This document shows positions 3,355 through 56,709 of a stretch of DNA of 64,000 bases, one piece after another; within the stretch, counting starts at the first letter, position 1; every line of letters starts with the position of its first letter. The DNA lies in contig NW_025765691.1 of the NCBI RefSeq assembly GCF_003918875.1, positions 1 through 64,000 on the forward strand, given 5' to 3'. A program made the translations under genes and the position numbers. This DNA comes from Haliotis rubra. Its lineage: Eukaryota. The notes beneath the pieces are model-generated. The model was given only the letters and a program-made list of their open reading frames with translations, ran no database searches and was not told where the DNA came from.

Positions 3355-5967
3355 TGCCTTTCAGCTTGAATGATAATTACAATATTTTGTTTTCAACACT
3401 TTTATCTAAGGGATAGTTCATAATTGATGGGGTGTGATGCTGATCTTTATGGAGTAGCATGAGCAAAGTGAATAACCCACTCCCCTTACAATTTATTTAC
3501 AAAGTAAGTGACACCCCCATGCAGCATGTAAAGTACTCTCTCTCTCTCTCTCACACACACACACCCACCCCACCCCTAGTATTTGTGTACAAAATTGATG
3601 TCCCTTCTACCTCCCCAGAACAAAGTGGGTGACCCCCTAAAATCATCACCGCCAGCCATAAATTATAAACAGTCCCAAATGTGATTTGTTTGGCTTCAGC
3701 TTTGAGCCATTACCCAAAACAGCTGAACTAAGCAACCAATTTAAAGGAGTTAAGGATCATGTATAAATGCAGCAAATTCTGTCCACAAACACCTGTATAC
3801 GGACATGTTTTCACAGTTACATAACTAATTACGACAAAAAATCAGAATTATTTCCAGAACACAATGGGGTGTTTGAGGCTATTTCCATTAACGTTGCCGA
3901 TTATATGATATTTATTACGTGATGTAAATTACATGATGCTTGCATTATAAAACAACACAGTTAATGAAAATGAACGCATCATTACACCATGAGGAGGTTT
4001 ATGAAATGTGGACGCCGGCCAGGTTTGGAGCACGTTTGTGCCCAAGGTATAAAAATAAGGCCTCCCCAAGCAATAGCAGCCATTGTATCCTGAGAGCAGC
4101 ATGAACCCCAAGATGAAGAAGATTGTGTGTTAGTGTGTTTGCTGGGGAGAGGGAATGACAGAGAATGCAACGTGCCTTATCTCGCCAGCCCTGTAAACCG
4201 TCACATGCCTGGATGCGTCGTGATAAAACGGGACGAATCCGCTACCATACAAACTAGCTTTAGATATATGGCCACGCCAAACAAACGTGGCCGAACGTGA
4301 CAAAACTTGAAAGGACCGTGAGATGCCGGGGAATACACATGCCCCCGGTCCCACTACGTACCCACTACTGACCGCCTACAAGTACACAAGTTTTGTTACG
4401 GCCTGTTACGTGCTGTCAAGTTTCTTTGCGTTCCCCCCGTTTTACTACGGCCAAGCACTTTCTCATTAGATTATGAACCGTGACTGCCGGGGCAAATGTT
4501 TGAACAGTTTAAAAATCTGGCATAGCATCCACGGCAACCACGGACTGACATGTTCGCTCATTCAGTCCCCTACGTTGTCTCACGTCCATCCCGTTTGGTC
4601 CCCGTTTCAACACGGGGCTGCCGTGGCCACCGGGAACAGTGTAACCCTAGCATTAGTTGGTTGGTTGTTTAACGCCGCAGTCAACCCCCAAAAGTACTAG
4701 AATCTGTACTTTACTAAGAAAGTGTAATCCCAAATATAACATATGTTATAAATGTGTATTTGTTGGCTTTCACCCTGAAGAACCAATTTCCTCGAGGCTG
4801 GCAGATCTAACCTATCCCATTTGGGTAGACCGATGCACATGCTGTCAGTTACTGGATTGTCTGGCCCAGACTCGACTTTGAACAGACCATCGTCATATAT
4901 AATGAATGCTGAGGGCAACAAACGAACCAACCAACCAAACATGCGAACCAACTAGATGCATGGTCATGAAGGGATAATTGAGGAACGGATGAAGAACAGG
5001 TGGAGGGATAAATGCAGAAAGAATGGTGGTACAAATGAACAGATTAAGAAATACTGTATTTATTACATAGTATGAGAGTTTTGTTTCTTAACGCCTTGTA
5101 AGAAGCAATGTGACCGCTGACCTAGACCAGAATCTGCTTCACAGTCTGACGTACCCCACTCAAAATGTGGTTGGACCGTTATTTTCAGTTTGCCCTGGCA
5201 GCGTAGACATCCTATGACCTAGGGGCTGACAGATACACCACATGTAAAGGCAACATTTCTATGTCTTTCACATAGCCCCGTGAACTAAAGTTGAGTCGGT
5301 CGGTCGGATTCCAATAAAAAAGAATAATATAAAATCTGAATTTGTTCATATCTGCATCAGAAAAGAAGATTAAGAACATCTATAAGTTATTTCTGCTTTA
5401 TGGAAAAACCCAGACGAGCGGTCTTAAAAACCAATTTATTCTGTTTTCATTTGGTATTCAAGAAATATATATGTCAGCAAGATCATTTTGTTAGAACTTC
5501 CTTATGTGTATCACTTGTAAATGCCATTCAAAGACCAAGATCATTTGTTGTCAAATTTGCAGATTTAGAATCTATAACAAAGATTGTACTGCAAAGCAAA
5601 ACCAGCAGAAAATATGGAATAGATTGAATCAGATGTTACTGCCACAACGTTAGACACCTCGACGTTTTATGTTTTAATACCTTAATGTATTAATGTTAAT
5701 AATCAACAAATGTTAATACCAAGCGATTATCTTGTTTGTTTTATTAATTTTCACGACTATCTACAGCCTTCACCATACCACTGACACAGGCAGGAAGCAA
5801 TTGAACGAGCAGTCAGTTGGTCCTGATTTCGAGTGGATTTTTTATCATTGGGTCGGTGGCCAATTTACAGTCGGGCGAAGAGAAACACAGAAATAAAGAA
5901 TTTTCTTTAATCATTGCGAAATGTCTCGCATCACTTGATTGTTAATTGACACAAAGCATAGAAGGAA

Positions 5968-8900
5968 TCAGTCACGACATAGGTATCCCATCATGGTGTT
6001 CGTAATAGTCTGTACAACAGCAGGCGGTGGATGGAAGTCAGGCAGTCCGAGCGCTGAAGTCATATCCCAAAAGTCAAGGAAGATAACTCTGTCTTTCAAG
6101 GGACGGAACTCTTCGTGGAGTATATCGCGGAATACCAGACCCCAGTAGGAGTACATTTCATGGTACGGTTGCCTGAAATAAGCATGCGGTCCTCTGACTG
6201 CCACTACGACATTAGGGGCCCGTTGCATGAGGGTTTTGGTTCTTGAGACCAGTTTTCTGACGTGCAGTCTGTAGACGTCTTGGTGCACCACGATGAAGTG
6301 GGTGTTCATGTACAACACAATGATATCTCGAGAATTGTTTTGGATTTTATCAAAATGGTGAGATTCGGGTTTGGTATACGTTTTCGGGTAGTGTATGAGT
6401 CCAGGAAAGTAGGGGAACTCATGGGGCTCCCAGTGGACGGAGTAGTTGTGATGAGGATGGAAGAGGACTTTAGGCTCGTGGGGTGCGGGGAACGACAGGA
6501 GCAACCCTCAACACGTTGTTCATCTCCATGAAGATCTGTATGCTCGTCGAGTCGCCGGGTATCCACAAATTCCTGTTTTCAGACATGCGCGGTAGGCCGG
6601 CTCTGTGATGGGAATAGTCACTACGCACAGTCAGGGAAATCCACGCGCCCCTGTAGAAGAATCCAGACGGCGCTTCAACCCGCCAGGTGGCGCGAGGTGA
6701 CACGGCGCTGCAGGGGTCGACGTCTTAGAGGAAAGGACGCCCTGGTTTTCAGGACCTGCGGAAGAAAATATTTAATGAGATCCAGGACAAATACTTGCAA
6801 GTACGTTAAAGACTTTTTCATGTTACTATAGCTAATGTGTCATGCCTTTTTCTTTTAAGTTGTATATAATCGGAAAAAATAAAAGCCATACAAATAAATA
6901 GGTATTATAATGAAACTTTATTTGAGATGAATCTGTAATGAATGTTATTATTGTTGCCGTGCATCTGTATATACAAATGTTAATAACTGAGAAATTAATC
7001 GTGATTTCATATTACCTTTGGATATATTCACCGTAATATTTTGTACGAATAATTCCTGTTCTGTATCACGTGACCTGCAAATTTAAAAGTTTGTAGGTAA
7101 AAACATATATCTACATAGTTTACGTTACATGCCAAATAGTATATTTCACAATAACACTAAATTTGAACACGCAAATATCAGCGTTCACGAGATAATATGA
7201 ACATCCTGATGATAAGAAGTAATGTTACATTATTTTAAATTGTTTACAGGAAACGTATATTAATGGGTATCTGTAAAACTTGGATTATGATGTGTGAGTT
7301 TCGTTATTTGTTTCCTTCAGTATAGTTTTGAAAGTAAGTGCAGGCAGAAATGGATAACCTTGAGTACAGAGCAGTCATAAATTTTTGGTCCTCCAGGGCC
7401 ACGCGGCGAAGCACAGTGAAGAGCGATTGACAGCAGTACGAGTACCCCATGTGACAGCAGTACGAGTACCCCATGTGACTCAGTACCCGTACTGCTATAC
7501 TGATGGAGTACATGCGATTAGATGTCACGTGACCAGAAACTAGCGACATGTGCATGTCACATATTACGTTTATGTGAATGATAAAAACCATTCTTCAATA
7601 TCATACAGTTATTTCTATCTTGCGCATATCAGAAGTATTTTAGGCTGAAAACGTTTTGATAGCCCCTCGTACTTAGTCAATGCTCAAACAATTTACTTAC
7701 GTCCCTTCAACTTCAACGGTGAATGTTGATTAAAAGACATATTAATATGAAGGTCGTGAATCGTGTACTCACAAGTCGTAAATAAGCTTCTCTATTGGCG
7801 ACATCGGTATCCGTCGCCGATATGTCCACGTGTTCACCAACATGCTACAGTTGAGGTCTGGATGCAAGGGGCGGACACAGTAGTACGGCAGGTCACCGTT
7901 GTGCGCGGCCAAGTCGCAATATTCCGCTGGGGGCATTGGCCGCGTGAAACAGAGAGTCGACTCCATCGCGACGCCATTGAAGAAGTCTGCGTGCGCAGAC
8001 CACAATGTGTCATATTGATGATATTTCCGATAAATGAGAGCGATTTCTTCTTTACGTTTTTCAATATGACAGAAAATGGTTGGCGTCCCAGCCCAAACTG
8101 CTCTAAAAAATGCCGGTGTAACTTCCGTTATTATGGTCCATGACGTCACCGGTAACGCTGGCTCCCAATCCACGTTCTTCCATCCATAACCGGAAGTAGT
8201 CTCCGCCGCCAGTTCGTCTGTTTCCGTAACTGTCGTATGTTTCTATTCTGACGTTGATGGTGTCGTTTAGGGCAAACGTTGTCTGTCCATGAAGGTACAG
8301 CCTAGACAACCGTGCGTCCGTCACCGTCTTGAGATCAATATCCAAAGGATTTCGCAGAATGTCCTCTTCCGACAAGTAGCGCCTCGGTTTCTCCACCATC
8401 TCCATGTTAGTGTCGATCTTTGACCACTGTTTCATCACGACGTATAATCTATAACATGCAGTGTTGAACAGGTTCAAAGAAAAAGTGAGTTCGTATATAT
8501 GCCGCCTTGATGATACAGTATTTTATTCATAGCGTCAGCTCCATATGTGGGAGAATGCTTTTGTTGCCATGGAAATGATGCAGTTCTTAGACATTACGTT
8601 GGCCCTATAATTAAGGACATACATTTTGGCTATCAGTGTCTTTTCTTAATTAGTCTGAATTAGTGGCCGCGGGATAATGAATGGCAGAAAAACAGAATAA
8701 ATAGACTCGACGTAATGAAGGCAAAGAATCTAACATTTTAGATTTTACTCACCTTTAGGAAACTTGTGATCGGTACATCCGGAAATACATGTACTGCAGT
8801 AATTATTTGTATTATTGGGAATCATTTTAAAAGAATCCAGCCCATCCCACTTTATTCAATGGACTCAGTGGGTATTTTATTCCAGCATTTACGTCCTACA

Positions 8901-11457: not shown

Positions 11458-11934
11458 CCTCTGCCACAGGCCAGAAAAATGTGACGATTCGTCACACCTT
11501 GCAATGTCAAATTCATCCATAAAACTAAAATGTACAAATTTCTTTTACTCATATATTTTTGACGAGTTTACACATCAAACTAAACATCTTTAATAGAATG
11601 GTTTTAGTTTCACTGAGAAAATATCCAAAACATGTGACACTATTTCGATTTGCGTAGCGATCCTTTGTTTACATAGGTTGTACGGCTCCACGTGCAGTCA
11701 TCGAAGCCGACGGAGAGACAAACGATGCAGCCAGTTTGATATCTAAATATGTTATGTCATAGACCTAACTGTCGCAGTTGTGGAAGAATATATGTGTAAC
11801 AATGTAAAACATTATGAAGAGAGCGCCGAAAAGCTTTCGTGAGTCCAATCTCTTCTTATTATGAATATGCACGTTTGATTACAAACAAGAGAAAAGTCCG
11901 GTCACGTGATATGCAAATTAGCCTGTGGCAGTGA
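11458..11934. mobile_element. piggyBac-like non-autonomous element
   Basis: TTAA followed by cctctgccacaggc; inverted copy gcctgtggcagtga at ~11920-11933; right TTAA not preserved. Confidence 0.5.
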
Positions 11935-12387
11935 TGTCCGGCTAACGTTGACATGAAATCAACTATGGCACCGTGACTGCTGTATCCGCTAAGTCGGTTC
12001 TTAGATCGGCACCGGTTGCTGACGATCCTTTTAAACTCAGCATCTCCTAGAAGTGTGCAGTGCTCTATCCAAGTGACTTCATTGGTACATAATGAGATGA
12101 CGGTCTGTACAGATGACGAACCTGTTTTGATAAAGAGATAAGGGCTACGTTTAAGAGCCCCTTAGGAACTGAAAATGCTGGGGTTCAAGTTGTTTTAAAT
12201 AGTACTTCAGTGTTATCATGGGCGTGACAGCTTTACGTGGTAGGAGTTCCAGAAGTGATGCAGGTTGTGGACGGTTTTCACCATCACGGGCATGTTGCTG
12301 ACACAACAACAGTTATCAAGGCGACTTTGGGATTCGAACCCTCGATCCTTGGAATCTGGCCCTCCCTAGAGACCAAAGTGTGATGGG

Positions 12388-12486
12388 AAATCACCCGAAT
12401 CTGTTAATTCCGGAAGTACAGAATGGTCAGACGCCACGAAGGGGCGAGTTGGTTCCACGTTCGGAATCAACAGATTCGGGTGATTT
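12388..12486. repeat. Short foldback element (~25-bp inverted arms)
   Basis: aaatcacccgaatctgttaattccg ... cggaatcaacagattcgggtgattt. Confidence 0.75.
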
Positions 12487-13346
12487 TTCATTTTTTAAAA
12501 TGATGTTTCCTCCCATGTCATGGCTAAGCTCCAATTTATTTGTAATTTTGCAATACGACCTTAGTGCTAGGTCAGTTGTACGTGTAAATACAAGATGAGG
12601 ATTACAGGTGAATTATCTGCTTCAAAGCAAATTGCATGACGTCGTCATGTTTTGAGTAAAACACAAAGCGGTGACGAATACGTACCTTTGTCAACTGTCA
12701 ACTCTCTCACAACACTGTGTTAATTCTCCCTTCCAAAGAACAGTCATTCCTAATGACTGACTCGCGCCAATCAGTATGTTTTTTAGCAAACATTTACACT
12801 GAAAATTCCTGTTCGCATCTAATTAAACAGTACACAATCGTCTATAAATACGCTTACTGTTTCCATTGCTCCAAAGGTACGACAATTACACAAAACTGAT
12901 GATCGATTCAGTGTCCATCTCTTGCTATAGCAGTGTTTTGTACGGTTTGCCTACACACAATTAAACACCCAACCAAACCTTGCCAATGATTCGATCTCAA
13001 TGCAAACACTTTGTTGTGTGTTAGCGTTTAGCTGATTTCAGGTTCCCAGTGTGGATGTTGACATTCCACCTATAACACATCAATGTCTGTCCGACTTCAT
13101 TAGTGGACAATGATTTCAACGGGGCGTAATGGTGCAGCTATGATAGCCTACAGCAGTCTGGGTTTGGAAGTCAACACATCGTTTTTCGTACTATGATACT
13201 CTTCAGGTGACTCCAACAGAGATAGTCTTTCAGAAAGCCCTATGTACAGCGTAGTACGTTACCAAGGCAACATTTATTTTCTCACAATGGTGATTTAAGC
13301 GTGACTTCAACAACGCAGTGGGTCTTTTAACCTCTCGGAATGCAAG

Positions 13347-14522
13347 ATGGGTGCTTGTAGTTTGTGTTTGACGTTCCTGCTGGGTACGTATGTAGTCACG
13401 GCTAAAGGACAAATCAACAGCACAGTGAAGACAGAAATTATAGGTCTACGATCAGAACTTTTAAGGAACCTGGGGCCCAATGTACCACCAATCATGTCCG
13501 AAGGAAGTGCTATCAAACTTGAGTTATCCTTGAAGTCGCTATATATCAATAATCTCAACTCAGCGACGGAGACTCTCCATACCACAGCTTGTGTCCTTAT
13601 GACCTGGTACGACAGGTCTGTCTCCTGGTCACCTGGCAACCATTCCGGTATCCAACAAGTACAGTTCGACATGTCCGAAGTGTGGACGCCCGTGTTGGTG
13701 CTCAGCAACTCCGTCGGGAATTCCGCCCCTCTCTCCACCACCGTGCCTGTCGTCCTAACGGCTGACGGGAGGTTCATGTGGCAGATCCCAGCGACGTGGG
13801 CCACAACTTGTACGATTAGCATAGAAAAGTATCCTTTTGACGAACAGTTCTGTGATCTGAAGTTCACGACAGTTGAAGGGCCCCTGCTTGAAATGACAGC
13901 CGACGCCAACGACGATCCAAAAAACGACGACATCGGTATTCTGCCTGACGGGACTGGTGAATGGGAGATTCGAAACTTGTCTTTGGTTAAAGCTGGAAAG
14001 GAAGGACAATTGCCCGGTCTACAGTATCGACTACACATGAAGCGGAGGTACCTGTTCCACATGCTGAACGTTGTGTTCCCGATGTCTGTGCTGTCGTTCA
14101 CGAGCACTATGGTGTTCCTACTTCCCACACGGTCGGGAGAAAAGATAGGCTTTCTTATGGCTGTGTTTGTGTCTAACGCCCTCTTCCTCACCTACAACCA
14201 GGAGTCGATGCCTCACACCTCCAACTCTGTGTCCAGTCTATCGCTATATCTCACACTCATCCAAGTTCAGGAGTTTCTCACCATATTTGGAACCATCATG
14301 GTGTACATAGTGTATGATCAGCGAATGGTAGACCAAGAGTTGAAGGTGAAGGTCAACAAAGTACAGGTAACTCCGGTTGACAGTGCCACCTCAGATCTCA
14401 GGAAGCGCAGGTCTTTAAGGGATCGTTTCCGAGAGACCCCAGCTGACCGAAAACTGGACTGCATATTCTTTTGTATCTCCTTGTTCTTAGCTATTACGGC
14501 GTACATGACTATTCTTTTATAA
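13347..14522 (+). CDS. Intronless Cys-loop ligand-gated ion channel subunit (divergent nAChR-like, non-alpha), 391 aa, copy 1
   Basis: Signal peptide; WYD...W and VWTP motifs; Cys-loop CTISIEKYPFDEQFC; GEW; LHMKRR pre-M1; M1 proline; M2 GEK; four TM helices; short M3-M4 loop. Confidence 0.95.
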   Translation: MGACSLCLTFLLGTYVVTAKGQINSTVKTEIIGLRSELLRNLGPNVPPIMSEGSAIKLELSLKSLYINNLNSATETLHTTACVLMTWYDRSVSWSPGNHSGIQQVQFDMSEVWTPVLVLSNSVGNSAPLSTTVPVVLTADGRFMWQIPATWATTCTISIEKYPFDEQFCDLKFTTVEGPLLEMTADANDDPKNDDIGILPDGTGEWEIRNLSLVKAGKEGQLPGLQYRLHMKRRYLFHMLNVVFPMSVLSFTSTMVFLLPTRSGEKIGFLMAVFVSNALFLTYNQESMPHTSNSVSSLSLYLTLIQVQEFLTIFGTIMVYIVYDQRMVDQELKVKVNKVQVTPVDSATSDLRKRRSLRDRFRETPADRKLDCIFFCISLFLAITAYMTILL

Positions 14523-14865
14523 CGATGCAAGTGAAAAGAAACACTTCAGTTCATTGTCACATTGGCAATATCATCAGTGATTCACGATATGTAAAGGGAG
14601 ATTATGTTGCCATGTCGTTGCAGTATATAGAGTTATCCCCCTTGATGTAAACGCCACTTCAGAATATCTGGTCATTCGTTTGAGAGGCATATAGGCACAG
14701 AAACATGCATTTGTACCTTTCATATTTAATAGCATCTATATGATATAAGTCTAACAAATTTCGTTTTTGTTGATTTTAAAGGAAATCTGAACGTGGCCGA
14801 AATCTTACTCGTTAAAATCGTCTGCTTCATCTTCGTTCATGAAGCATACATAACACTGATACATA

Positions 14866-15020
14866 GGAATGTTTCCAAGAGGTGACATGTAGAAAGTGTA
14901 AAGGCTGCCTGAGTATACCTAAAGGATCGCGATGTCAGCCAGGGAATGTTTCCAAGAGGTGACATGTAGAAAGTGTAAAGGCTGCCTGAGTATACCTAAA
15001 GGATCGCGATGTCAGCCAGG
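14866..15020. repeat. Perfect 77-bp tandem duplication
   Basis: ggaatgtttccaagagg...gatgtcagccag repeated twice. Confidence 0.9.
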
Positions 15021-15750
15021 GCGACTTAGTTTCTGTAAACGCTGCCCGAAGGAGGCGTGGATCGTGGCTCACAGTGTCGATCTTTGAGTCGATCATCGAT
15101 CATTTACCAATTTTGTTGAGGAAGAAATACAACACAGAGAAACCACCCTCAGTGAACACAAAAAGTGGGTGAGTGAGTCTGGTTTTACGCCAATTTTAGC
15201 AATATTATGGCGGTTGTGGAATCGGGTCTTCGGCGTGACGAGCGGACGCTTTCACCATAATCTACCCCACCGCCCCGAACAAATTGTCACTGGAACATAG
15301 TAATGTTTCAGTACTATGTACAACTCTCGTTACAAACTATCACTGTATATACTTTCAGGATATAAACATGATGTTTTATTGAACAGTGCTGTCTAGACTG
15401 AAATGATTGTGTGGACCGTATTGATTTGTATAATATATTTTAATATCGTTTTTCTGCCCGCTTGTTGTTTGGTTCCATATGCAGTAATTTCCAGCAATGA
15501 GGCAGCTGTCTGTAAGTAATGGAATCTGGACCAAACAATCCAGTGATTGACATTATAAGCGAAGGTCCACACCATCACGTTGGCATTCAATAAACCATGT
15601 CGCCGTGCCTGACCATCCGATCAATTCCGTTGTCACTTACGACCAGCAACCTGGAATTCCCTCGGGCTGTGGAAGGTTCCTTTTGACAAACTCGTGTGGA
15701 ACAGTTCCAGATGATGTGCTTGAGAGATAAGAAAGTTGGTTTGATTAAAT

Positions 15751-15990
15751 ACTCGTGAAGATCGGGTTATAAATTGCCCTTCAGCAGCCCACGCTTGTTG
15801 TAAGAAACGACTTACATTATTCGGGTGAATAGGCTCGCTGACTTGATTGACACGTCATCGTCTCCCAATTGCCTAGATCGATGTTCATGCTGTTGATCAC
15901 TGGATTGTCTGGTCCATACTCACTTATTTACAGACCGTCGCCATATAGCTGGAATACTGCTGAGTGCGGCGTTAAACAACAACCAACAAC
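15751..15990 (+). mobile_element. SINE family B, moderately diverged
   Basis: actcgtgaagatc head, family body and tail ending in (caa)n. Confidence 0.85.
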
Positions 15991-17866
15991 CATGGTTTGA
16001 TAAACAGATAAAGATTGACTGTTCTAGCGGCATTAAATGGCAGCCTAGCAAGCTTAATTGACTTATGTACACTTAAATACGTTTAATATATTTCCTTATT
16101 TTTGGCCTGTGAGTTTCTATTTTTGTTGAAGAGTTTGTATACACATAGTAAAGGATATCCAAACGGGCATACAATTCTCAAGAAATAACGTAAGTATTAC
16201 TAACCGAGCACAAAATAACCTTCACCAACCGCAATAGCTATCAAGCTTGTGCAGTGGAGGATCTCTACGTATCCTGCGATCCGTAATGTCCCAAACATGT
16301 GATTGAAATCTCGACTCATGCCAAGTTAGAATTGCTACCGAGAAATTTCCAATGGCTAGTGCATGGCAAGACCGAAAGCTAGCATGTCGTCCTTGAATAC
16401 TGACCTTGTGCTTCAGAGGATGGTCATATAAATGTGGTACAACAACCCGGTCTAGGATGATGTGAGGTACCATTGTCCATTCAGATTTTGCCTGATCGTC
16501 ACAAGGTCGGTTTTACAGTCATATGAGAGGCATCCGTGCGCCACCAATTGCCCCCAGATTCCGTTGCCCGTATGCAGTGTGTCTGCTTTGCCAAACATGA
16601 ACAGAAGTAGTCGACTTCCCCATGACGTCACATTCCAGTGACGTCGAACTTGACATCAAATAGTTGTGCTACGTTGTGCTCTGGGGATAACACCATACCT
16701 CTGATAGGCCGTCTGACTCTATGCCCGGCCGATTATAGGCGAGTTCAGGCCGTTCTATTGGACAAACAACGATGTTGAAGCTACTGATTCTGAGTGGGGG
16801 TGTATCTTTCTAAGGACTTGTCACTCGTGGTCCACCTGAACGCTGACAACCATTAACATCATCAGGTTGTTTTCTGGCCAGTCGATGGCTGACAACCAAC
16901 ATCTACTGCAACAGCCCTCAGTACCATGCCAGCATTCTGCATACCGATAACCATCGTTGAGATGTTAAGGAGACCCGATATCAACATCGAAATCCATTGG
17001 GTTTCTAAGTTATCGAGCTATTAGAACAATTTATTGAAACTTCTTATTTGCTTAATGACGGGCACACGCATTGCAAATGGCGTCTTTAATCTTAGCATCT
17101 GCACATCTAAAAAGCATAGTGCGGGCATCAGAATCATCATACAAAAAACAGAATTATGATGTGACTACAGCGCAGATTAAAAGTCATAGATTTTGCAAAA
17201 CATTTTTTCCATGTCCACATTTCAAGCACATGTAATTGCGGCGAGATAGACGACCGTGCCCATTTTTCTAAATACATGTAACGTCAATAATTCATCCGCA
17301 GCAGCATTGTACGTGGTATTATTCAAGGCAACACGTCCGTTCTAATGAACGATCAGGTATTTCTATTGAGGAGGCCATGCTAAACAGTCTGTCCATTATC
17401 AGACAATTACTCTATTCCTGTTTTCCAACTCAATATATTAAGATTTAATCCGGCCTTGTGCTTCCTCTATTCCAGTGTCACCTCTGGTGCACACACCTGC
17501 TTATCAATTCAGCACCCATTAGCAGCTACGAAGCTGATAAACTAAATGTTTAAACACGTTTTGCGTGTTCTCACAAAGCTGTAGTTCACGTGACTTTCCA
17601 CGTATCAGTGTCTGTACGATCCATTAGCGGACAATGATTCCAACGGAACGTAATGGTTCAGCTTTGATAGCCTACAGCATTCTGGGATTGGAAGTCAACG
17701 TATTGTTTTCCCCACAATGATACACCTCATATGACTCCAACAGAGATAGTCTTTCAGAATGCTCTACAACGTGGTATTTTGCCAAGGCAACATTTATTTT
17801 CTCACAATGGTGATTTTCCCGTGACTTCAACAACGCAGTGGGTCTCTTCGCCTCTCGGAATGCAAG

Positions 17867-19039
17867 ATGGGTGCTTGTCGGCTATGTTTGACGTTCCTGC
17901 TGGGTACGTGGGTAGTCAAGGCCGAAGGGCAGATCAACAGCACAGTGAAGAGAGAAATTATAGGTCTACGATCAGAACTTTTAAGGAACCTGGGGCCCAA
18001 TGTACCACCAATCATGTCCGAAGAAAGTGCTATCAAACTTGAGTTATCCTTGAAGTCGCTATATATCAATGATCTCAATTCAGCGACGGAGACTCTCCAT
18101 ACCACAGTTTGTGTTATTATGACCTGGTACGACAGGTCTGTCTCCTGGTCACCTGGCAACCATTCCGGTATCCAACAAGTACAGTTCGACATGTCCGAAG
18201 TGTGGACGCCCGTGTTTGTGCTCAGCAACTCCGTCGGGAATTCCGGCCCTGTCTCCACCACCGTGCCCGTCGTCCTAACGGCTGACGGGAGGTTCATGTG
18301 GCAGATTCCAGCGACGTGGGCCACAACTTGTACGATTAACATAGAAAGGTATCCTTATGACGAGCAGCACTGTGCTCTGAAGTTCACAACAGTTGAAGGG
18401 GTCCTGCTTGACATAACAGCCGACGCCAACGACGACCCAAACAACGACATCGGCTTTCAGATTGACGGGACTGGTGAATGGGAGATTCTCAACTTGTCTT
18501 TGGTTAAAGCTGGAAAGGAAAGACAATCGCCCGGTCTACAGTATCGACTACACATGAAGCGGAGGTACCTGTTCCACATGCTGAACGTTGTGTTTCCGAT
18601 GTCTGTCCTGTTGTTCACGAGCACTATGGTGTTCCTACTTCCCACACGGTCGGGAGAAAAGATTGGCTTTCTTATGGCTGTGTTTGTGTCTAACGCCCTC
18701 TTCCTCACCTACAACCAGGAGTCGATGCCTCACACCTCCAGCTCTGTGTCCAGTCTATCGCTATATCTCACAATCATCCAAGTTCAGGAGTTTTTAATCG
18801 TGCTGGCAACCATCGTGGTGCACATAGTGTATGATCAGCGAATAGTGGACCAAGAGTTGAAGGTGAAGGTCAACAAAGTACAGGTAACTCCGGTTGACAG
18901 GGCCACCTCAGATCTCAGGAAGCGCAGGTCTTTACGGGATCGTTTCCGAGAGACCCCAGCTGACCGAAAACTGGACTGCATATTCTTTTGTATCTCCTTG
19001 TTCTTAGCTATTACGGCGTACATGACTATTCTTTTATAA
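17867..19039 (+). CDS. Intronless Cys-loop ligand-gated ion channel subunit (divergent nAChR-like, non-alpha), 390 aa, copy 2
   Basis: Close paralogue of 13347-14522; Cys-loop CTINIERYPYDEQHC; identical M2 and M4. Confidence 0.95.
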   Translation: MGACRLCLTFLLGTWVVKAEGQINSTVKREIIGLRSELLRNLGPNVPPIMSEESAIKLELSLKSLYINDLNSATETLHTTVCVIMTWYDRSVSWSPGNHSGIQQVQFDMSEVWTPVFVLSNSVGNSGPVSTTVPVVLTADGRFMWQIPATWATTCTINIERYPYDEQHCALKFTTVEGVLLDITADANDDPNNDIGFQIDGTGEWEILNLSLVKAGKERQSPGLQYRLHMKRRYLFHMLNVVFPMSVLLFTSTMVFLLPTRSGEKIGFLMAVFVSNALFLTYNQESMPHTSSSVSSLSLYLTIIQVQEFLIVLATIVVHIVYDQRIVDQELKVKVNKVQVTPVDRATSDLRKRRSLRDRFRETPADRKLDCIFFCISLFLAITAYMTILL

Positions 19040-19057
19040 CGATGCAATATTATGGTT

Positions 19058-19903: not shown

Positions 19904-20937
19904 ACTGTATGACCCACGGTTGTGACAGACGTGACCTCAGTGCGATCTTATGGGAAAGAGGTTGCATTGTGAAGCACCAAATGTGCTTAAGGGATCTCAA
20001 TAGTTTTCAGGTTTCAGAGGTGATTACCTGTTAAATCATGATGAATACTATGTCATCAGTTTTAATGAAAACTCTTCAAGGGGTAGATTTCCATGTCATA
20101 CAAATTGAATTATTTTTCAAGCTCTCTCAGGCTGTTATGGAAGCGTTTGAATGGTTTCCCGCTTGTGTTTACATGCTATATTGTGCTACCTTTCCTCTAA
20201 AGGAATAACACTTCTTCGGCTGGGTTTTCCCTCGTTTTTTAGGAGATCCTTCGACCCATGTTGCTTTAAATTTGGTAAAATTTATCGGCGTCATTTGTGA
20301 ATTTCCCGATTCAGAAGATAAAACAGTAATTTACTTTTATTATATTGATAACATGATTAATAAAGAGCTAAATGTTTTCAGACTTCGCCGTTTTGTTTTA
20401 AATGAAATATTAAACCATGTCTGTATTTAAGGCAATAAATTCTTTCTAAAACACTTGCATATTGATACTGGGTATAGAGTGAGTGAGTAAAACGTACATT
20501 CAGAATATCTCAACTTTCGTCCAATTACTAAAGTAATTATATATCTTTCAAATTGAATTGTGTGATATGAATGTTAAGCACACTGACAGGAAATTTGCAA
20601 ATAACATATCTTATACAGTGTAGATTAGAATATGTATACATAGATGGCGGTATTTCTACCTTGTACAATTAAGTGTCTTTCGACGACAACCAAAGGCAGT
20701 GCATTATTATGGCAATTTTTCACTGCTTCTGCTTGATAATTAGATATCTTGTGCATCCTTCGTTTCCATAAGATTTTATCCGCACTTGCTAAAGGACATC
20801 AAACCAATTGTTTTCCATACTATATATCAGAACTTTTCTTCCACATAGAAATACAAATGAAATAGTGCTCATGGTCCTAGATCGAAATGATTGTTGACAC
20901 GAAAACATGACTTTCGTCCATGATGCACGAAAACCGA

Positions 20938-21041
20938 TGACGTCATCGCAATTGTTTGACGTCACGTTTCTCAGGGAGATCCAGTCAGTCAGTGTGACGT
21001 CGGGAAACAGACAAAAGTACACGTCGGCCAATCTGCTTCAG
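20938..21041 (+). promoter_or_regulatory. Putative promoter/first non-coding exon with clustered CRE sites
   Basis: TGACGTCA at 20938 and 20957, TGACGTCG at 20995; CpG-rich; donor CAG|gtgggt after 21041. Confidence 0.5.
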
Positions 21042-22373: not shown

Positions 22374-22580
22374 ATGTCGGAGACTGCGGTGGCAACGTTC
22401 AACTACATGGCAGAGTACCTAGCCGCCATGTACAGACACCTCCCAGCTGTTGTCACCAGAGTCTGCAACGTGGTCTACGACACCCTGGGGTCAGGCTCAA
22501 CGTTAGTCGTCCAGGGGACCCAGAGTGCCAGGCGACGGATCAGCGCCATGATGGGCTGGACGACAACCAAAGACAAATGA
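22374..22580 (+). CDS. Putative 68-aa uncharacterised small protein (or terminal coding exon)
   Basis: Acceptor ttgcag directly before ATG; strong GC3 bias in the frame MSETAVATFNYMAEYLAAMYRHLPAVV...WTTTKDK*; no family recognised. Confidence 0.55.
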   Translation: MSETAVATFNYMAEYLAAMYRHLPAVVTRVCNVVYDTLGSGSTLVVQGTQSARRRISAMMGWTTTKDK

Positions 22581-37957: not shown

Positions 37958-39687
37958 GAGGCTGGCGGATGCAGGCTGATGTGAGGATGTGTGGGTGGGG
38001 AAAGAGAGAATGGCAAAGGTAATAATTGCCTGTTGCTTCTGCAAACAGAACAAAACACCTACATGGAGAAATTGGAGTACACCTCTACAACATTAAAAAC
38101 TCCATCAAAACAGTACTGATAAGTGATCGTTCACCCCCCACACATTAAACGTTATTAAAGGTTATAAGAAGTTTGCCGTTATGATAAATATGAGATTGAT
38201 ACAATGCAGGAACATCCCTACTGATGTGTCAAAAACGCAGTCATGTGAAACGTACTTGAAATTATGGATATTAATGTTTGGGTTTATGTATGTTTGTTTG
38301 ATTTGTCCGTGCACCGTACAAAACAGGAACTTGCACCCAGGTCCCTTTCTGCTGACTAGCTCAAATAACGTAAGTAAAGAAGTAAAATAGAGTAATATGT
38401 TCCTGATCAGAAAATTATTACAAAAATGTCCTTTCTCGAAAACATGGCGAAACCAACGAATAAATTCTTATAAGTCGCCTTTGTAGAGAGGTGCCAATGA
38501 GATCGGGTGATAAGGCTTGGTGACTTGATTAATATAAGTCGCTGTATAACAAATGCGAAGACTGATGATGCAGTTAATCACTTGATTGACTGGTCCAGGC
38601 TCGCTTATTTACAGAATGCCTTTAAAAGCTGGGATTTTGAGAAGAGCGGCGTTTAGCAATAAAAATACCCCCGAAGCCCCAAAAGTAGAATATGTCGCGC
38701 CTGACGGGCAGTTGATTTTTACTAGTTCTTGATGTGTGCGCATGCGCGAGTGTCTGAGATGGAAACCAACGACTTTCGCAGTTTTGACACTAAAACAAAC
38801 TTTGTTTTCCACATTACTTTATAAAACCCAAACGTCCGTCTGTAAATCCACATATTTCTGGATAGCCTTTGGCAAGTGTAGTTAAACAACCCGCATTACA
38901 TGAACGAGAGGAAATGATAGGATAATGCCGGACACGCTCCAGGAGCACAAACCAAAGGTACACAAAAAATACTTTAAAAATCTCAGTCAGCCTTTCCTAG
39001 CCTCGCATGAAGAATATTTACGACAGTTTTCTGTTACGAACAGCTTAAAGCATTAAAAATAGGATCACAACAACAACAACAATGAATATATATATTGCAG
39101 CACACACACTCACATACGCAGGCACGCACGCACGCTCGCACCCATACATACACACAGATAAATGTATACAAAAATTAAATATCCAAATATAACAGTTCTG
39201 TATCACTTGACCCTTCTCCCCATTCCCCAAAGCTTCAGGACCTTTCCCCAAAGGAGTCATGGACCAGAAAATGGCTCAGGGAATAATGTGACAACGATGT
39301 TACCTACATAATATTACCCTTCAGCTGTCAGAGCTGGGACAAAACGTGTTCAGTGTGCCGGGAGAGGCCTGACAAGCAATGATGTGGTTTGGGTACACTC
39401 CCGACACACAGGGAATATACCTGTCCCTGTCACAAGGGACGGGGGGTCACTGAATCCAGGCGGGATGTCGCCATTGTTGGGGGTAAGGGCTAAAGACGTG
39501 GATTATTATCCCAGCAGGGTGATCTGTGATGAGGACCGTCAAACGGCGAGAGGGACAGGTGTCACGATATCATCACGAGTTCATCACTGCATGCATTGAC
39601 CGACATTATTGAAGGGAATTCAAGCTGGCGTGATTAAGTTTGCTTTTAATAGCATTGCTTTGAACAGAATGCCAGTAATATCATGGC

Positions 39688-40189
39688 GTGTCGACTTCAC
39701 GTGGGAGGAAGCCTGAAGTGACGACTTCACGTGGGAGGGAAGCCTGAAGTGACGACTTCGGGTGGGAGGGATGCCTGAAGTGACGACTTCACGTGGGAGG
39801 GATGCCTGAAGTGACGACTTCACGTGGGAGGGAAGCCTGAAGTGACGACTTCACGTGGTAGGGAAGCCTGAAGTGACGACTTCACGTGGGAGGGATGCCT
39901 GAAGTGACGACTTCATGTGGGAGGATGCCTTAAGTGACGACTTCACGTGGGAGGGAAGCCTTAAGGGACGACTTCACGAGGGAGGGAAGCCTGAAGTGTC
40001 GACTTCACGTGGGAGGGAAGCCTGAAGTGACGACTTCACGTGGGAGGGATGCCTGAAGTGACCACTTCACGTGGGAGGGAAGCCTGAAGTGACGACTTCA
40101 CGTGGGAGGGAAGCCTGAAGTGACGACTTCACGTGGGTGGGAAGCCTGAAGTGACGACTTCACCTGGGAGGGATGCCTGAAGTGACGAC
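39688..40189. repeat. 31-bp minisatellite, ~16 copies
   Basis: Unit cacgtgggagggaagcctgaagtgacgactt. Confidence 0.95.
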
Positions 40190-40287
40190 GGTCTGAGATG
40201 TTTACCACTTTGGTGAAACCCACGATCTAGGGTATGGTGCAGAGAAACCTGAGAACATAATGGGGGCGAACTGGGATTCGAACCGAC

Positions 40288-40491
40288 AATCATAGGTTTC
40301 TGGTGTACCCAAGGGATGCAACTCTGAGAATTACAGCTCCTCTGACGGCTGGGCCAATCATAGGTTTCTGGTGTACCCAAGGGACGCAACTCTGAGAATT
40401 ACAGCTCCTCTGACGGCTGGGCCAATCATAGGTTTCTGGTGTACCCAAGGGACGCAACTCTGAGAATTACAGCTCCTCAAACGGCTGGGCC
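40288..40491. repeat. 68-bp tandem triplication
   Basis: aatcataggtttctggtgtacccaaggga...gacggctgggcc starting at 40288, 40356 and 40424. Confidence 0.92.
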
Positions 40492-41285: not shown

Positions 41286-41603
41286 CCCGACCGCGTCATA
41301 CCAAAAGACGTTAAAATATGGTACTTGTTGGTCCCTGCCTGGCGCTCGGCATTAATGGGTACAACAAGGACTGGTCGGCTCGGAGTCAGTATAATGTGTC
41401 TGAGTGGGGTATTCATGCTTCACTGTGGTATGGTATCTCAGTGGGCTAGCACTATAAAACCAGCTTCAGTCTGGGCTAGTACAAGCAGCCGCACATACAC
41501 ATACACACGCATGCACGTCGTCATATGAGCGAAATATTCTCAAGCACGACGTAAAACTCAATTTCACCTCACCTCACCTCACCTCACCTCACCTCACCTC
41601 ACC
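41286..41603 (+). mobile_element. SINE family C (Meta-domain-like), 5'-truncated
   Basis: Near-identical to 50730-51091; (CACCT)n tail; TSD ctgaa(a/c)tgggta. Confidence 0.88.
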
Positions 41604-50729: not shown

Positions 50730-51091
50730 GGACCGCCTCCATGGTGTAGTGGTTAGAGCGTCCGCCCGGAGAGCGGAAGGTCGCGGGTTCGATCCCCGAC
50801 CGCGTCATACCAAAAGACGTTAAAATATGGTACTTGTTGGTCCCTGCCTGGCGCTAGGCATTAATGGGTTCAACAAGGACTGGTCGGCTCGGAGTCAGTA
50901 TAATGTGTCTGAATGGGGTATTCATGCTTCACTGCGGCATGGTACCTCAGTGAGCTAGCCCTATAAAACCAGCTTAATTCTGGGCTAGTACAAGCAGCCG
51001 CACATACACATACACACGCATGCAGGTCGTCATATGAGCGAAATATTCTCCAGCGCGACGTTAAACTCAATTTCACCTCACCTCACCTCAC
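50730..51091 (+). mobile_element. SINE family C: tRNA head plus Meta/MESC-like central domain, full length
   Basis: A box tggtgtagtgg, B box ggttcgatcc, then gtcataccaaaagacgttaaaatatggtac...tgcctggcgct..gcatta resembling the MetaSINE domain (from memory, not aligned); (CACCT)n tail; TSD acaatgatcaagg. Confidence 0.88.
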
Positions 51092-54959: not shown

Positions 54960-55715
54960 ACCCATCCCCTTCCCAGCTCTTGCAGCCTATGCCCATCCCC
55001 TTCTCAGCTCTTGCAGCCTATACTCATCACCTTCTCAGCTCTTGCAGCCTATACTCATCACCTTCTCAGCCCTTGCAGCCTATACTCATCACCTTCTCAA
55101 CCCTTGCAGCCTATACTCATCACCTTCTCAACCCTTGCAGCCTATACTCATCACCTTCTCAACCCTTGCAGCCCTCATCACTCATCACTCATCTTCTCAG
55201 CTCTTGCAGCCTATACTCATCACCTTCCTCACCCTCTGCAGCCTATACTCATCACCTTCTCAGCTCTTGCAGCCTATACTCATCACCTTCTCAACACTTG
55301 CAGCCTATACTCATCACCTTCTCAACTCTTGCAGCCTATACTCATCACCTTCTCAACCCTTGCAGCCTATACTCATCACCTTCTCAACCCTTGCAGCCTT
55401 CATCACCTTCTCAACCCTTGCAGCCTATACTCATCACCTTCTCAACCCTTGCAGCCTATACTCATCACCTTCTCAACTCTTGCAGCCTATACTCATCACC
55501 TTCTCAACCCTTGCAGCCTATACTCATCACCTTCTCAACCCTTGCAGCCTATACTCATCACCTTCTCAGCTCTTGCAGCCTATACTCATCACCTTCTCTC
55601 AACCCTAGCAGCCTATACTCATCACCTTCTCAGCTCTTGCAGCCTATACTCATCATCTTCTCTACCCTAGCAGCCTATACTCATCACCTTTTCAGCTCTT
55701 GCAGCCTATACTTAC
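54960..55715. repeat. 31-bp minisatellite, ~24 copies
   Basis: Unit cttgcagcctatactcatcaccttctca(a/g)(c/t)c. Confidence 0.96.
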
Positions 55716-56709
55716 CCTATTCTTACATAACAGCCAACACACATCCCTTTTGATCTCTTCCGTGTATTGAATGTTCTGCAATAACATTGTTTAATCTTGA
55801 CATAAATTTAATGCTGTCACTTTATTTTGGCCAAAATCTGGTGAAAGGGCGTGCGTTAACATGCCCAATGATGTGCTTAAATAACATCTCCCGAACAAAT
55901 GGTCACATCAAATATAAAGGCTGGTAAAAACTGCATTCCAGTTAACACACAACTACTACATACACCTACTGCCTACACTTAGGGAGACGACACGGTACAA
56001 CAAAGACCCTGTTGTAATTATATATATAGTTTAACCTGATTCCTTGCATCGCGCGCCAGTTAAGCGAGCAGCTAAAATCAGACGCTGAACCTGAGACTAA
56101 TTCTATTTATTCAACACCCCGTACAGATCTGGCCGTGATGTAAAATTAAATGTCCTTTTCATGTGCACATGAATCAAACAATGACGCTCGCCCGGCGTAG
56201 CGAGTCTTAAAGTATCTCCCAGCTGTCACTTACAATGAAAAGTAGTTCTGCTTGCTCTTCCGTCAACGTGACAATAGCGTGACAGTTGAGCATGTCCATA
56301 GCTCGTGCACACGGCAATGGGCGGGACAAGATGGGCTGACAGGCAACCCGTGATGCTAATCCTATATATCAACTTGGACCAATATTTGTATTACTAATAA
56401 CATTGTCAATGTGTCGTGAGCCCTGTCACTGTTCCTATACGTATGTAACATATGCACATAGTCGGAAATAGCAACAATTACCACTTAGACAGCATAGGTT
56501 GGCCATGTCGTTAGTGCGCTCGCTCGCTCGTGTACGACCCTAGTTCTAATCCCAACATGGAAACCGATATGATTGTAATATTCATCGCTTGTTCCATGCC
56601 GTATAATTTATGAAATTATGGAAATGAACATAAGAAAATAGCTTTGGGTATCGCTAATATGTCGTCCTAGATGTACAACTTTTGTGTCAAGCCGCGTTTT
56701 TGTGGTATG

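What the first reader, a model, noticed from the sequence alone, without database searches (positions are those of the whole stretch)
13347..19039. Tandem intronless Cys-loop receptors lacking the acetylcholine aromatic box: candidate gastropod chemosensory channels
Seen: both ORFs are intact and single-exon, and keep the Cys-loop and the cation-selective GEK. Loop A reads VWTPV(L/F)VLSN (no Tyr). Loop B reads KFTTVEG (no Trp of KFGSW). Loop C reads LVKAGKE..(L/S)PGLQY (no vicinal Cys or YxCC). Loop D has Cys where Trp is usual (TT(A/V)CV). Known: molluscs have large expansions of intronless nAChR-like genes, and octopus chemotactile receptors are nAChR-derived channels that lost ACh binding. 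Inference: these may be non-cholinergic sensory receptors, for example for food or settlement cues.
Basis: partly seen in the sequence, partly recalled or inferred. Interest (0 to 1): 0.72.

Follow-up and report, generated by a model that had tools for sequence, protein, structure and literature searches.

The report
Abalone orphan nicotinic-like channel gene pair
Two neighbouring intron-free genes in blacklip abalone encode nicotinic-receptor-like cation channel subunits that have lost the usual acetylcholine-binding residues. They are two of at least 84 such genes in this genome, a kind of expansion already described in molluscs, and a taste or smell role is untested.

Summary
Two intact uninterrupted ORFs (13347-14522, 391 aa; 17867-19039, 390 aa; 90% identical) encode complete Cys-loop subunits. 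Each has a signal peptide, a C-x13-C loop, M1-M4 and the GEK motif. Each lacks the loop A Tyr, loop B Trp, loop C Cys-Cys and loop D Trp.

The genome is Haliotis rubra. The pair is not special: none of 84 intact single-ORF paralogues examined has YxCC, and only 13 keep the loop B Trp. This scan has already filed similar arrays from other DNA of this genome as a known kind.

Orthologues exist in H. asinina, H. rufescens and H. cracherodii. Between species dN/dS is about 0.3. The M2 pore lining is invariant, with an unusual 9' Val. The Trp55-equivalent site is the most variable residue in the protein.

Copy 1 is the positional orthologue. Copy 2 is a young 1.45-kb DNA duplicate evolving near neutrality (36.5 nonsynonymous to 11.5 synonymous changes), possibly with a frameshift allele.

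Structure-based identity to octopus and squid chemotactile receptors (18-20%) is lower than to vertebrate nAChRs (23-24%).

No RNA data could be found, so a sensory role is neither supported nor refuted. Verdict: a new member of a known kind, of modest interest.

The parts
13347..14522 (+). Copy 1 (win1): complete 391-aa nAChR-like Cys-loop subunit ORF. It is the positional orthologue of the single H. asinina gene.
   Evidence: ORF. Pfam LBD and TM domains. Collinear flanks with H. asinina L032. 3' flank homologous to asinina. Its own branch has 7 nonsynonymous and 11 synonymous changes (7 and 10). AlphaFold model has mean pLDDT 82.5 with a typical beta-sandwich and 4 helices.
17867..19039 (+). 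Copy 2 (win2): complete 390-aa paralogue, a lineage-specific extra copy evolving at a near-neutral rate.
   Evidence: ORF. 90% identical to copy 1. Absent at the collinear place in H. asinina. Its branch has 35-36.5 nonsynonymous and 11.5-13 synonymous changes; Fisher p=0.037 against copy 1. A 2-bp deletion variant at 18397 appears in DNA contigs.
13079..14530 (+). Duplicated segment, copy 1 side: 268 bp of 5' flank, the CDS, and 8 bp after the stop.
   Evidence: blastn gives 92.5% identity over 1452 bp to 17604-19047. Homology stops just after the stop codon.
17604..19047 (+). Duplicated segment, copy 2 side. The new 3' flank is unrelated to that of copy 1 and there is no poly(A) trace.
13085..13296 (+). 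Conserved upstream block about 50-260 bp before the ATG, a candidate promoter or 5'UTR. It is shared by both copies and by the asinina and rufescens genes. A solo copy lies downstream of the asinina gene.
   Evidence: The alignment shows runs of invariant columns across five sequences. Both window copies match L032 13460-13696. Function is inferred only.
14364..14372 (+). In-frame CAG|GTAACT donor-like site in the M3-M4 loop of copy 1. The same site in copy 2 is at 18881-18889.
   Evidence: Conserved in all seven genes. NCBI models P0004 (asinina) and P0040 (cracherodii) use it to join the 68-aa exon at 22374-22580.

Best explanation
These are two tandem paralogues in Haliotis rubra of a small, abalone-specific subfamily with 1-2 genes per species. 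The subfamily sits inside the large molluscan expansion of intron-free, Cys-Cys-less nicotinic-receptor-like genes.

Each gene encodes a full pentameric ligand-gated channel subunit. The pore determinants are cation-type and strictly conserved: Glu at -1', Glu at 20', no Pro-Ala-Arg motif, and an unusual Val at 9'. The orthosteric pocket has lost the cation-pi box, so acetylcholine cannot bind in the canonical way.

Most likely they assemble, alone or with related expanded subunits, into cation channels opened by a ligand other than acetylcholine, still unknown. That last step is inferred.

Copy 1 is the conserved orthologue under purifying selection. Copy 2 arose by a 1.45-kb DNA-level duplication after the split from H. 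asinina. It is evolving at about the neutral rate, so it is either diverging in function or beginning to decay.
For: - Domain and fold: Pfam E about 1e-31. Best sequence matches in the PDB are nAChR beta1 and alpha7 at 1e-33. Structural Z is 27 to muscle and alpha7 nAChRs.
- Species: own-genome ORFs are identical to NCBI H. rubra proteins P0009 and P0010.
- Family size: 106 scored hits from 560 candidates. I extracted 84 intact single ORFs. None has YxCC, 13 have the loop B Trp, 5 the loop D Trp, 3 the loop A Tyr, and 83 keep the -1' Glu.
- Tree: the pair with its orthologues forms a 100%-supported clade on a long stem, sister to 9 other genes.
- Selection: between species dN/dS is 0.26-0.32, with the membrane-domain half (M1 to C-terminus) at 0.15-0.21 and the extracellular domain at 0.31-0.38. 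All M2 positions are invariant across 7 genes while pocket positions vary.
- Duplication: breakpoints, synteny and third-position distances of 0.069 within the pair against 0.15 to asinina.
- Asymmetry between copies.
- Literature: intronless tandem nAChR expansions in molluscs (PMC6896357); orphan Alpo4 and chemotactile receptors lacking ACh motifs (PMC10338036).
Against: - There are no functional or expression data. The genes could be silent or rarely expressed.
- Loss of the canonical box does not strictly exclude gating by acetylcholine or choline through another geometry. This rests on my own knowledge: nematode ACC channels use a different Trp.
- An accessory-subunit role fits the same sequence features.
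- Copy 2's near-neutral rate, its F164Y change in the Cys-loop motif, and the possible frameshift allele argue that at least that copy may not be needed.
Confidence: 0.72

Rival explanations
1. One reading: peripheral chemosensory channels, analogous to octopus chemotactile receptors. They would be expressed in tentacles, epipodium, osphradium or larvae and gated by environmental cues such as food or settlement chemicals.
For: - The ACh box is lost but the pore is conserved.
- The genes are tandem and intron-free, like CRs (PMC13174522).
- The fastest-changing residues lie in pocket loops. Site 82 (Trp55-equivalent) has 5 replacements among 7 genes, the highest in the protein. Loop C has a nonsynonymous-to-synonymous count ratio of 3.75, against 0.81 in M1-M3. 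CRs show a similar pattern of pocket diversification (PMC11526382).
- In bivalves the expanded nAChR genes are most highly expressed in gill, the water interface (PMC6896357).
Against: - There are no expression data at all.
- There are only 1-2 genes per species in this subfamily, not a diversified repertoire.
- Enrichment of replacements in pocket loops over the rest of the extracellular domain is not significant (p=0.27). It is equally expected from relaxed constraint on a disused site.
- The pair is no closer to CRT1 or CRB1 than to vertebrate nAChRs.
- Loop C is charged (Lys and Glu), unlike the hydrophobic CR pocket described in the literature.
Confidence: 0.18
2. Non-binding accessory or structural subunits, like vertebrate beta1, alpha5 or beta3. 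They would join ACh-gated heteromers built around canonical alpha subunits and tune conductance, gating or trafficking.
For: - The best sequence match in the PDB is muscle beta1, a subunit that forms no agonist site.
- All agonist-contact positions are degenerate on both the principal and complementary faces.
- The pore and the M2-M3 region are strongly conserved.
- Pocket variability fits a disused site.
Against: - At least 84 such genes would be a very large pool of accessory subunits for a modest set of canonical alpha subunits (inference).
- CRs and other expanded orphan relatives form channels without alpha subunits (PMC11526382).
- The pore differs from canonical partners: 9' Val and -4' Arg.
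Confidence: 0.17
3. Copy 2 (17867-19039) is a redundant young duplicate drifting towards a pseudogene. Only copy 1 matters.
For: - Its branch has a nonsynonymous-to-synonymous count ratio of 3.2, about the neutral expectation of 3.3. Copy 1's ratio is 0.64.
- It changes otherwise near-invariant Cys-loop residues: F164Y, F168H and D170A.
- It lost the ancestral 3' flank at the duplication breakpoint.
- A 2-bp deletion at 18397 appears in about a quarter of DNA depth in two runs of one animal.
Against: - The reference ORF is still intact over 390 codons.
- M2 and all structural hallmarks are unchanged.
- The same rate pattern is expected under neofunctionalisation.
- The deletion-bearing contig could come from cross-mapping or from an unassembled copy.
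Confidence: 0.4

Closest known systems
Expanded intronless nAChR-like genes of molluscs (Jiao et al. 2019, PMC6896357; divergent clades in the MolluscaGenes preprint, PMC13174522)
   Same: [quoted passage not shown]
   Different: This is a small abalone-specific subfamily on a long branch with only 1-2 genes per species. The published surveys searched here do not mention Haliotis.
Cephalopod chemotactile receptors CRT1 and CRB1 (PDB 9e6b, 8eiz)
   Same: nAChR-derived fold, no ACh motifs, intron-free tandem genes, cation channel architecture.
   Different: Only 20% and 18% structure-based identity with Z about 20, below the match to vertebrate nAChRs (Z 27, 23-24%). No sensory expression or hydrophobic ligand is shown. 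Loop C is shorter and charged. CRs form a mainly cephalopod clade.
Alpo4, orphan nAChR-like receptor of Alvinella pompejana (PDB 8bx5)
   Same: Lophotrochozoan nAChR-like subunit lacking the loop C Cys-Cys, with ligand unknown despite screening. Structural Z is 24.2.
   Different: 19% identity. Alpo4 comes from an annelid expansion. Nothing is known here about sterol-like binding.
Vertebrate muscle beta1 and neuronal beta3/alpha5 accessory subunits
   Same: Best sequence hits. They also lack agonist-contact residues.
   Different: About 23% identity. Those genes have introns and long M3-M4 loops. The loop here is only about 45 residues, and 9' is Val rather than Leu.

Membership tests
Cys-loop pentameric ligand-gated ion channel, nAChR-like branch | Neur_chan_LBD plus Neur_chan_memb domains above Pfam gathering scores | tested here: met
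   LBD scores 108-112 bits against a cut-off of 26. TM scores 33.5-34.6 bits against a cut-off of 28.1.
Cys-loop pentameric ligand-gated ion channel, nAChR-like branch | Cys-loop disulfide pair spaced by 13 residues with the (F/Y)PFD core | tested here: met
   C155 and C169 are invariant in 84 of 84 paralogues. The core is YPFD in copy 1 and YPYD in copy 2.
Cys-loop pentameric ligand-gated ion channel, nAChR-like branch | Beta-sandwich ectodomain plus four transmembrane helices, closest to solved nAChRs | tested here: met
   AlphaFold pLDDT 82.5 with helices at 235-258, 265-287, 297-339 and 366-390. Foldseek E about 1e-28 and VIA Z 27 to nAChR chains.
Cys-loop pentameric ligand-gated ion channel, nAChR-like branch | Cation-selectivity determinants: -1' Glu, no -2' Pro, 20' acidic | tested here: met
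   SGEK with E265 and E286, invariant in 7 orthologues and paralogues. Selectivity itself was not measured.
Agonist-binding (alpha-type) acetylcholine receptor subunit | Loop C vicinal Cys-Cys (YxCC) | tested here: not met
   No Cys-Cys in loop C of either copy, nor in any of 84 paralogues.
Agonist-binding (alpha-type) acetylcholine receptor subunit | Aromatic box on the principal face: loop A Tyr93, loop B Trp149 | tested here: not met
   S120 and V176 in all seven genes of the subfamily.
Complementary-face acetylcholine receptor subunit (gamma/delta/beta2-like) | Loop D Trp55 | tested here: not met
   Cys in both window copies; Ile, His or Tyr in orthologues.
Agonist-binding (alpha-type) acetylcholine receptor subunit | Gating by acetylcholine | not testable with these tools
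   Needs electrophysiology.
Cephalopod chemotactile receptors (CR) | Membership of the CR clade | tested here: inconclusive
   No CR sequence could be brought into a tree. Structure-based identity to CRT1 and CRB1 is 20% and 18%, lower than to alpha7 and muscle subunits at 23-24%. This argues against close kinship. The literature places CRs as a mainly cephalopod clade.
Cephalopod chemotactile receptors (CR) | Expression in peripheral sensory epithelium | tested here: inconclusive
   No RNA run holds the genes. Only DNA contigs of one sample do.
Cephalopod chemotactile receptors (CR) | Activation by poorly soluble or hydrophobic ligands, not ACh | not testable with these tools
   Needs heterologous expression.
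Cephalopod chemotactile receptors (CR) | Diversifying selection focused on the ligand pocket | tested here: inconclusive
   Site 82 is the most variable residue, and loop C has a nonsynonymous-to-synonymous count ratio of 3.75. Loops against the rest of the ectodomain give p=0.27; loops against TM give p=0.03. Only 7 sequences were available.
Molluscan intronless tandem nAChR expansion (Jiao et al. 2019) | Uninterrupted coding sequence, tandem copies, lineage-specific expansion | tested here: met
   definition from PMC6896357.

The most novel reading that the evidence does not exclude
This abalone-specific subfamily is a working non-cholinergic receptor. Its pocket is being retuned between species, with the Trp55-equivalent site reading Cys, Ile, His or Tyr. 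The young copy 2 is a neofunctionalising duplicate. If the genes are expressed on larval or tentacle epithelia, this would be a second, independent recruitment of nicotinic-type channels for external chemical sensing outside cephalopods. It might bear on settlement or food cues in abalone.
Probability: 0.12. Interest if true: 0.7.

Novelty: new member of a known kind. Interest (0 to 1): 0.3.

Why it matters
If the channels proved to be gated by environmental chemicals, abalone would give a second example, after cephalopods, of neurotransmitter-type channels turned into chemosensors. That would be in an aquaculture species whose larval settlement depends on chemical cues.

As it stands the pair adds two already-annotated genes to a known class. 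The useful new details are:
- the strictly conserved but unusual pore (9' Val, -4' Arg)
- the hypervariable Trp55-equivalent site
- the clear asymmetry between an old constrained copy and a young, fast-evolving one, which makes them a tidy pair for functional comparison

Tried and rejected
- **Expression.** The look-up of sequencing runs (kind rna) returned no RNA holder. Read laying showed only short DNA contigs of one animal. A search with the ectodomain alone, to catch partial transcript-derived proteins, found nothing. That is uninformative, because fragments under 117 aa are not candidates.
- **A 'third, broken copy' on contig C766.** Rejected. It is a 99.6% identical 3.7-kb duplicate contig of window 11845-15511 with 12 indels, so a haplotig or an unpolished piece.
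- **Retroposition as the origin of copy 2.** Rejected. The copied segment includes 268 bp of 5' flank, ends 8 bp after the stop, and has no poly(A).
- **Protein tree placing copy 2 outside (copy 1, asinina).** Judged an artefact of copy 2's fast protein evolution, because third-position distances group the two window copies.
- **Antisense ORF 13307-14191 (294 aa).** It is cut to 171 aa in copy 2, so it is not conserved. Taken as chance.
- **Key octopus papers PMC10228259 and PMC7605239.** Not held. CR features are taken from secondary sources.
- **Tree with cephalopod CRs.** Not possible, because no tool returned their sequences by reference.
- **Genome census.** It covers 84 ORFs.
- **Complex prediction.** Not used. 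Any Cys-loop ectodomain would probably pass, so a pass would not separate homomer from accessory subunit.


Full report
**What is there**

The window holds two intact ORFs on the + strand, 13347-14522 (391 aa) and 17867-19039 (390 aa). An in-frame stop lies 13 codons upstream of each ATG. Both ORFs match Pfam Neur_chan_LBD (E 4.6e-31 and 4.2e-32) and Neur_chan_memb above the curated cut-offs. They are 90% identical to each other.

Their best sequence matches among solved structures are muscle nAChR beta1 and neuronal alpha7, at E about 1e-33. An AlphaFold model of copy 1 has mean pLDDT 82.5. It shows the expected beta-sandwich and four long helices. It aligns best to nAChR chains, with Foldseek E about 1e-28 and VIA Z 27.3-27.5 at 23-24% identity. 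The window contains no N.

All quoted strings are present. I set the register with the ungapped HMMER alignment to beta1 and the standard alpha1/alpha7 landmarks, which are established knowledge. This gives:
- loop A: WxPD...Y reads WTPV...S (D89->V116, Y93->S120)
- loop B: W149->V176 and Y151->G178
- loop D: W55->C82
- loop C: no Cys-Cys and 4-5 residues shorter than in alpha7

The Cys-loop is C155-x13-C169. M2 reads SGEK-IGFLMAVFVSNALFLTYNQE. That gives Glu at -1' and at 20', but Val rather than Leu at 9', and Arg at -4'.

**Whose genome, and how special is the pair**

Two own-genome ORFs are identical to NCBI Haliotis rubra proteins P0009 and P0010, so the genome is blacklip abalone. The two window proteins are already records in NCBI and UniRef.

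A six-frame search of the genome gave 106 scored matches from 560 first-look candidates, nearly all without stops and lying in tandem clusters. I fetched 90 of these places and extracted 84 intact single ORFs. Among them:
- none has YxCC
- 13 keep the loop B Trp
- 5 keep the loop D Trp
- 3 keep the loop A Tyr
- all keep the Cys-loop cysteines
- 83 keep the -1' Glu
- 49 have Val at 9'

Loss of the acetylcholine box is therefore the norm in this family. Earlier follow-ups of this scan on other pieces of the same genome reached the same view of a 117-kb array.

In a tree of 87 proteins, the pair and its orthologues form a 100%-supported clade on a long stem of 0.8. That clade is sister to nine other abalone genes at about 36% identity.

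**History of the pair**

Orthologues are present in three other species:
- H. asinina has one intact ORF.
- H. rufescens has a tandem pair.
- H. cracherodii has a tandem pair.

The window is collinear with the asinina locus from about 5.9 kb to 30 kb. Copy 1 sits at the orthologous place and copy 2 is extra.

Only 1452 bp are shared between the two copies: 268 bp of 5' flank, the CDS and 8 bp after the stop. Copy 1's 3' flank matches asinina, while copy 2's is unrelated and has no poly(A). This is a small DNA-level duplication, not a retrocopy. Third-position distances are 0.069 within the pair and 0.15 to asinina, which dates the duplication after that split, or implies gene conversion.

**Selection**

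Between species dN/dS is 0.26-0.32. It is lower in the membrane-domain half, M1 to the C-terminus (0.15-0.21), than in the ectodomain (0.31-0.38). These have been working genes over synonymous distances of 0.24-0.54. All 18 pore and pocket landmark positions I tabulated in M2 are invariant across the seven genes, whereas pocket positions vary.

Parsimony counts on the seven-gene tree show that site 82, the Trp55 equivalent, has five replacements (Cys, Cys, Ile, His, Tyr, His, His). That is the highest count in the protein. Other hot sites lie in loops B, C and F and in the Cys-loop.

The ratio of nonsynonymous to synonymous changes is 3.75 in loop C. That is about the neutral expectation of 3.3. 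The ratio is 0.81 in M1-M3 and 0.17 in beta10. Pocket loops against the rest of the ectodomain are not significantly different (p=0.27). Against the TM segments p=0.03. This pattern fits either retuning of a ligand site or plain relaxation of a disused one. Seven sequences cannot separate the two.

**Asymmetry between the copies**

With asinina and rufescens as outgroups, copy 1's branch has 7 nonsynonymous and 10-11 synonymous changes. Copy 2's branch has 35-36.5 nonsynonymous and 11.5-13 synonymous changes (Fisher p=0.037). So omega is about 1 for copy 2.

Copy 2 also alters otherwise near-invariant Cys-loop residues, for example F164Y. Short-read contigs from the sequenced animal show a 2-bp deletion at 18397, at codon 177. 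It appears in about a quarter of the local depth in two runs of one sample. This may be a frameshift allele, but cross-mapping cannot be excluded. Copy 2 is therefore either neofunctionalising or starting to decay.

**Relation to octopus receptors**

In an all-against-representatives structural search, CRT1 (9e6b, Z 20.4, 20% identity) and squid CRB1 (8eiz, Z 20.1, 18%) rank below vertebrate nAChRs (Z 27, 23-24%) and the annelid orphan Alpo4 (Z 24.2, 19%). There is no sign of special kinship with chemotactile receptors.

The resemblance is one of kind: an nAChR-derived, intron-free, tandem gene without an ACh site. The literature describes such molluscan expansions (PMC6896357). A 2026 preprint already proposes that divergent gastropod clades may be ionotropic chemosensors and calls for the same experiments (PMC13174522).

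**Expression**

No RNA run holding the genes was found, and no relevant abalone paper surfaced. The sensory hypothesis is therefore untested here.

There is one indirect hint of transcription. NCBI models in H. asinina and H. cracherodii splice from a conserved in-frame donor in the M3-M4 loop (CAG|GTAACT; 14367 in copy 1, 18884 in copy 2) onto a conserved 68-aa exon. In the window that exon lies at 22374-22580, directly behind a strong acceptor.

In H. rubra the same exon is annotated as exon 2 of a separate small gene, LOC124272681, whose exon 1 is at 20907-21041. The exon is single-copy, is under purifying selection (dN/dS 0.17-0.37), and has no known family. Whether an M4-less receptor isoform really exists needs RNA data.

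**Verdict**

The 'non-cholinergic' inference is reasonable. The 'chemosensory' inference is an open idea that has already been published. The pair is an ordinary member of a known molluscan gene expansion with some neat evolutionary detail. I rate it a new member of a known kind, with interest 0.3.

Noticed in passing
window 22374-22580 (+), with a possible first exon at 20907-21041: A conserved 68-aa ORF sits directly behind a strong splice acceptor (ttgcag|ATG). It is single-copy in the genome, conserved in four Haliotis species (dN/dS 0.17-0.37), and has no Pfam or Atlas match. In H. rubra it is annotated as a 113-aa uncharacterized protein. In H. asinina and H. cracherodii it is fused in frame to the receptor gene, replacing M4.
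   Followed up: partly
window 18397 (inside copy 2, codon 177): A 2-bp deletion appears in one DNA contig at about a quarter of local depth, in two runs of the same animal. It may be a heterozygous frameshift allele of copy 2.
   Followed up: partly
G000 contig C766 (L003, 3657 bp) vs window 11845-15511: A short extra contig is 99.6% identical to the copy 1 region with 12 indels. It shows up as a 'broken third copy' in genome searches but is a haplotig or an unpolished duplicate.
   Followed up: yes
window 13085-13296 and 17566-17818; L032 13460-13696: An upstream block of about 200 bp is conserved across both copies and three species. H. asinina carries a solo copy of it downstream of its single gene, where copy 2 sits in H. 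rubra. This hints at an older duplication followed by loss, or at a repeat that mediated the duplication.
   Followed up: partly
window 15069-15267 and 15865-16063: Very high-copy repeats lie in the spacer between the two genes, with summed contig depth of 1e5-1e6 against about 20-70 for unique DNA. Related SINE-like pieces recur at 10.0-11.2 kb, 19.1-19.9 kb and 22.1-23.5 kb.
   Followed up: no
window about 5967-8473 (- strand): The upstream neighbour is homologous to exons of an NXPE4_C-domain gene called in H. rufescens and H. cracherodii. The gene order NXPE-like then receptor is conserved in four species.
   Followed up: no
window 39614-40295: A minisatellite with a 31-bp period and at least 16 overlapping register copies.
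   Followed up: no
window 41286-41582 and 50795-51091: A 297-bp direct repeat at 95% identity, with copies 9.5 kb apart.
   Followed up: no
window 54980-55753: Three overlapping ORFs in different + frames lie in a stretch with strong negative GC skew (-0.35). It looks like low-complexity repeat rather than a gene.
   Followed up: no
L031 7858-9030 (H. rufescens, upstream of its receptor pair): A 390-codon ORF made of a (F/C)HEHDALD(G/C)-type repeat. It is a coding-looking minisatellite, not a third receptor.
   Followed up: no
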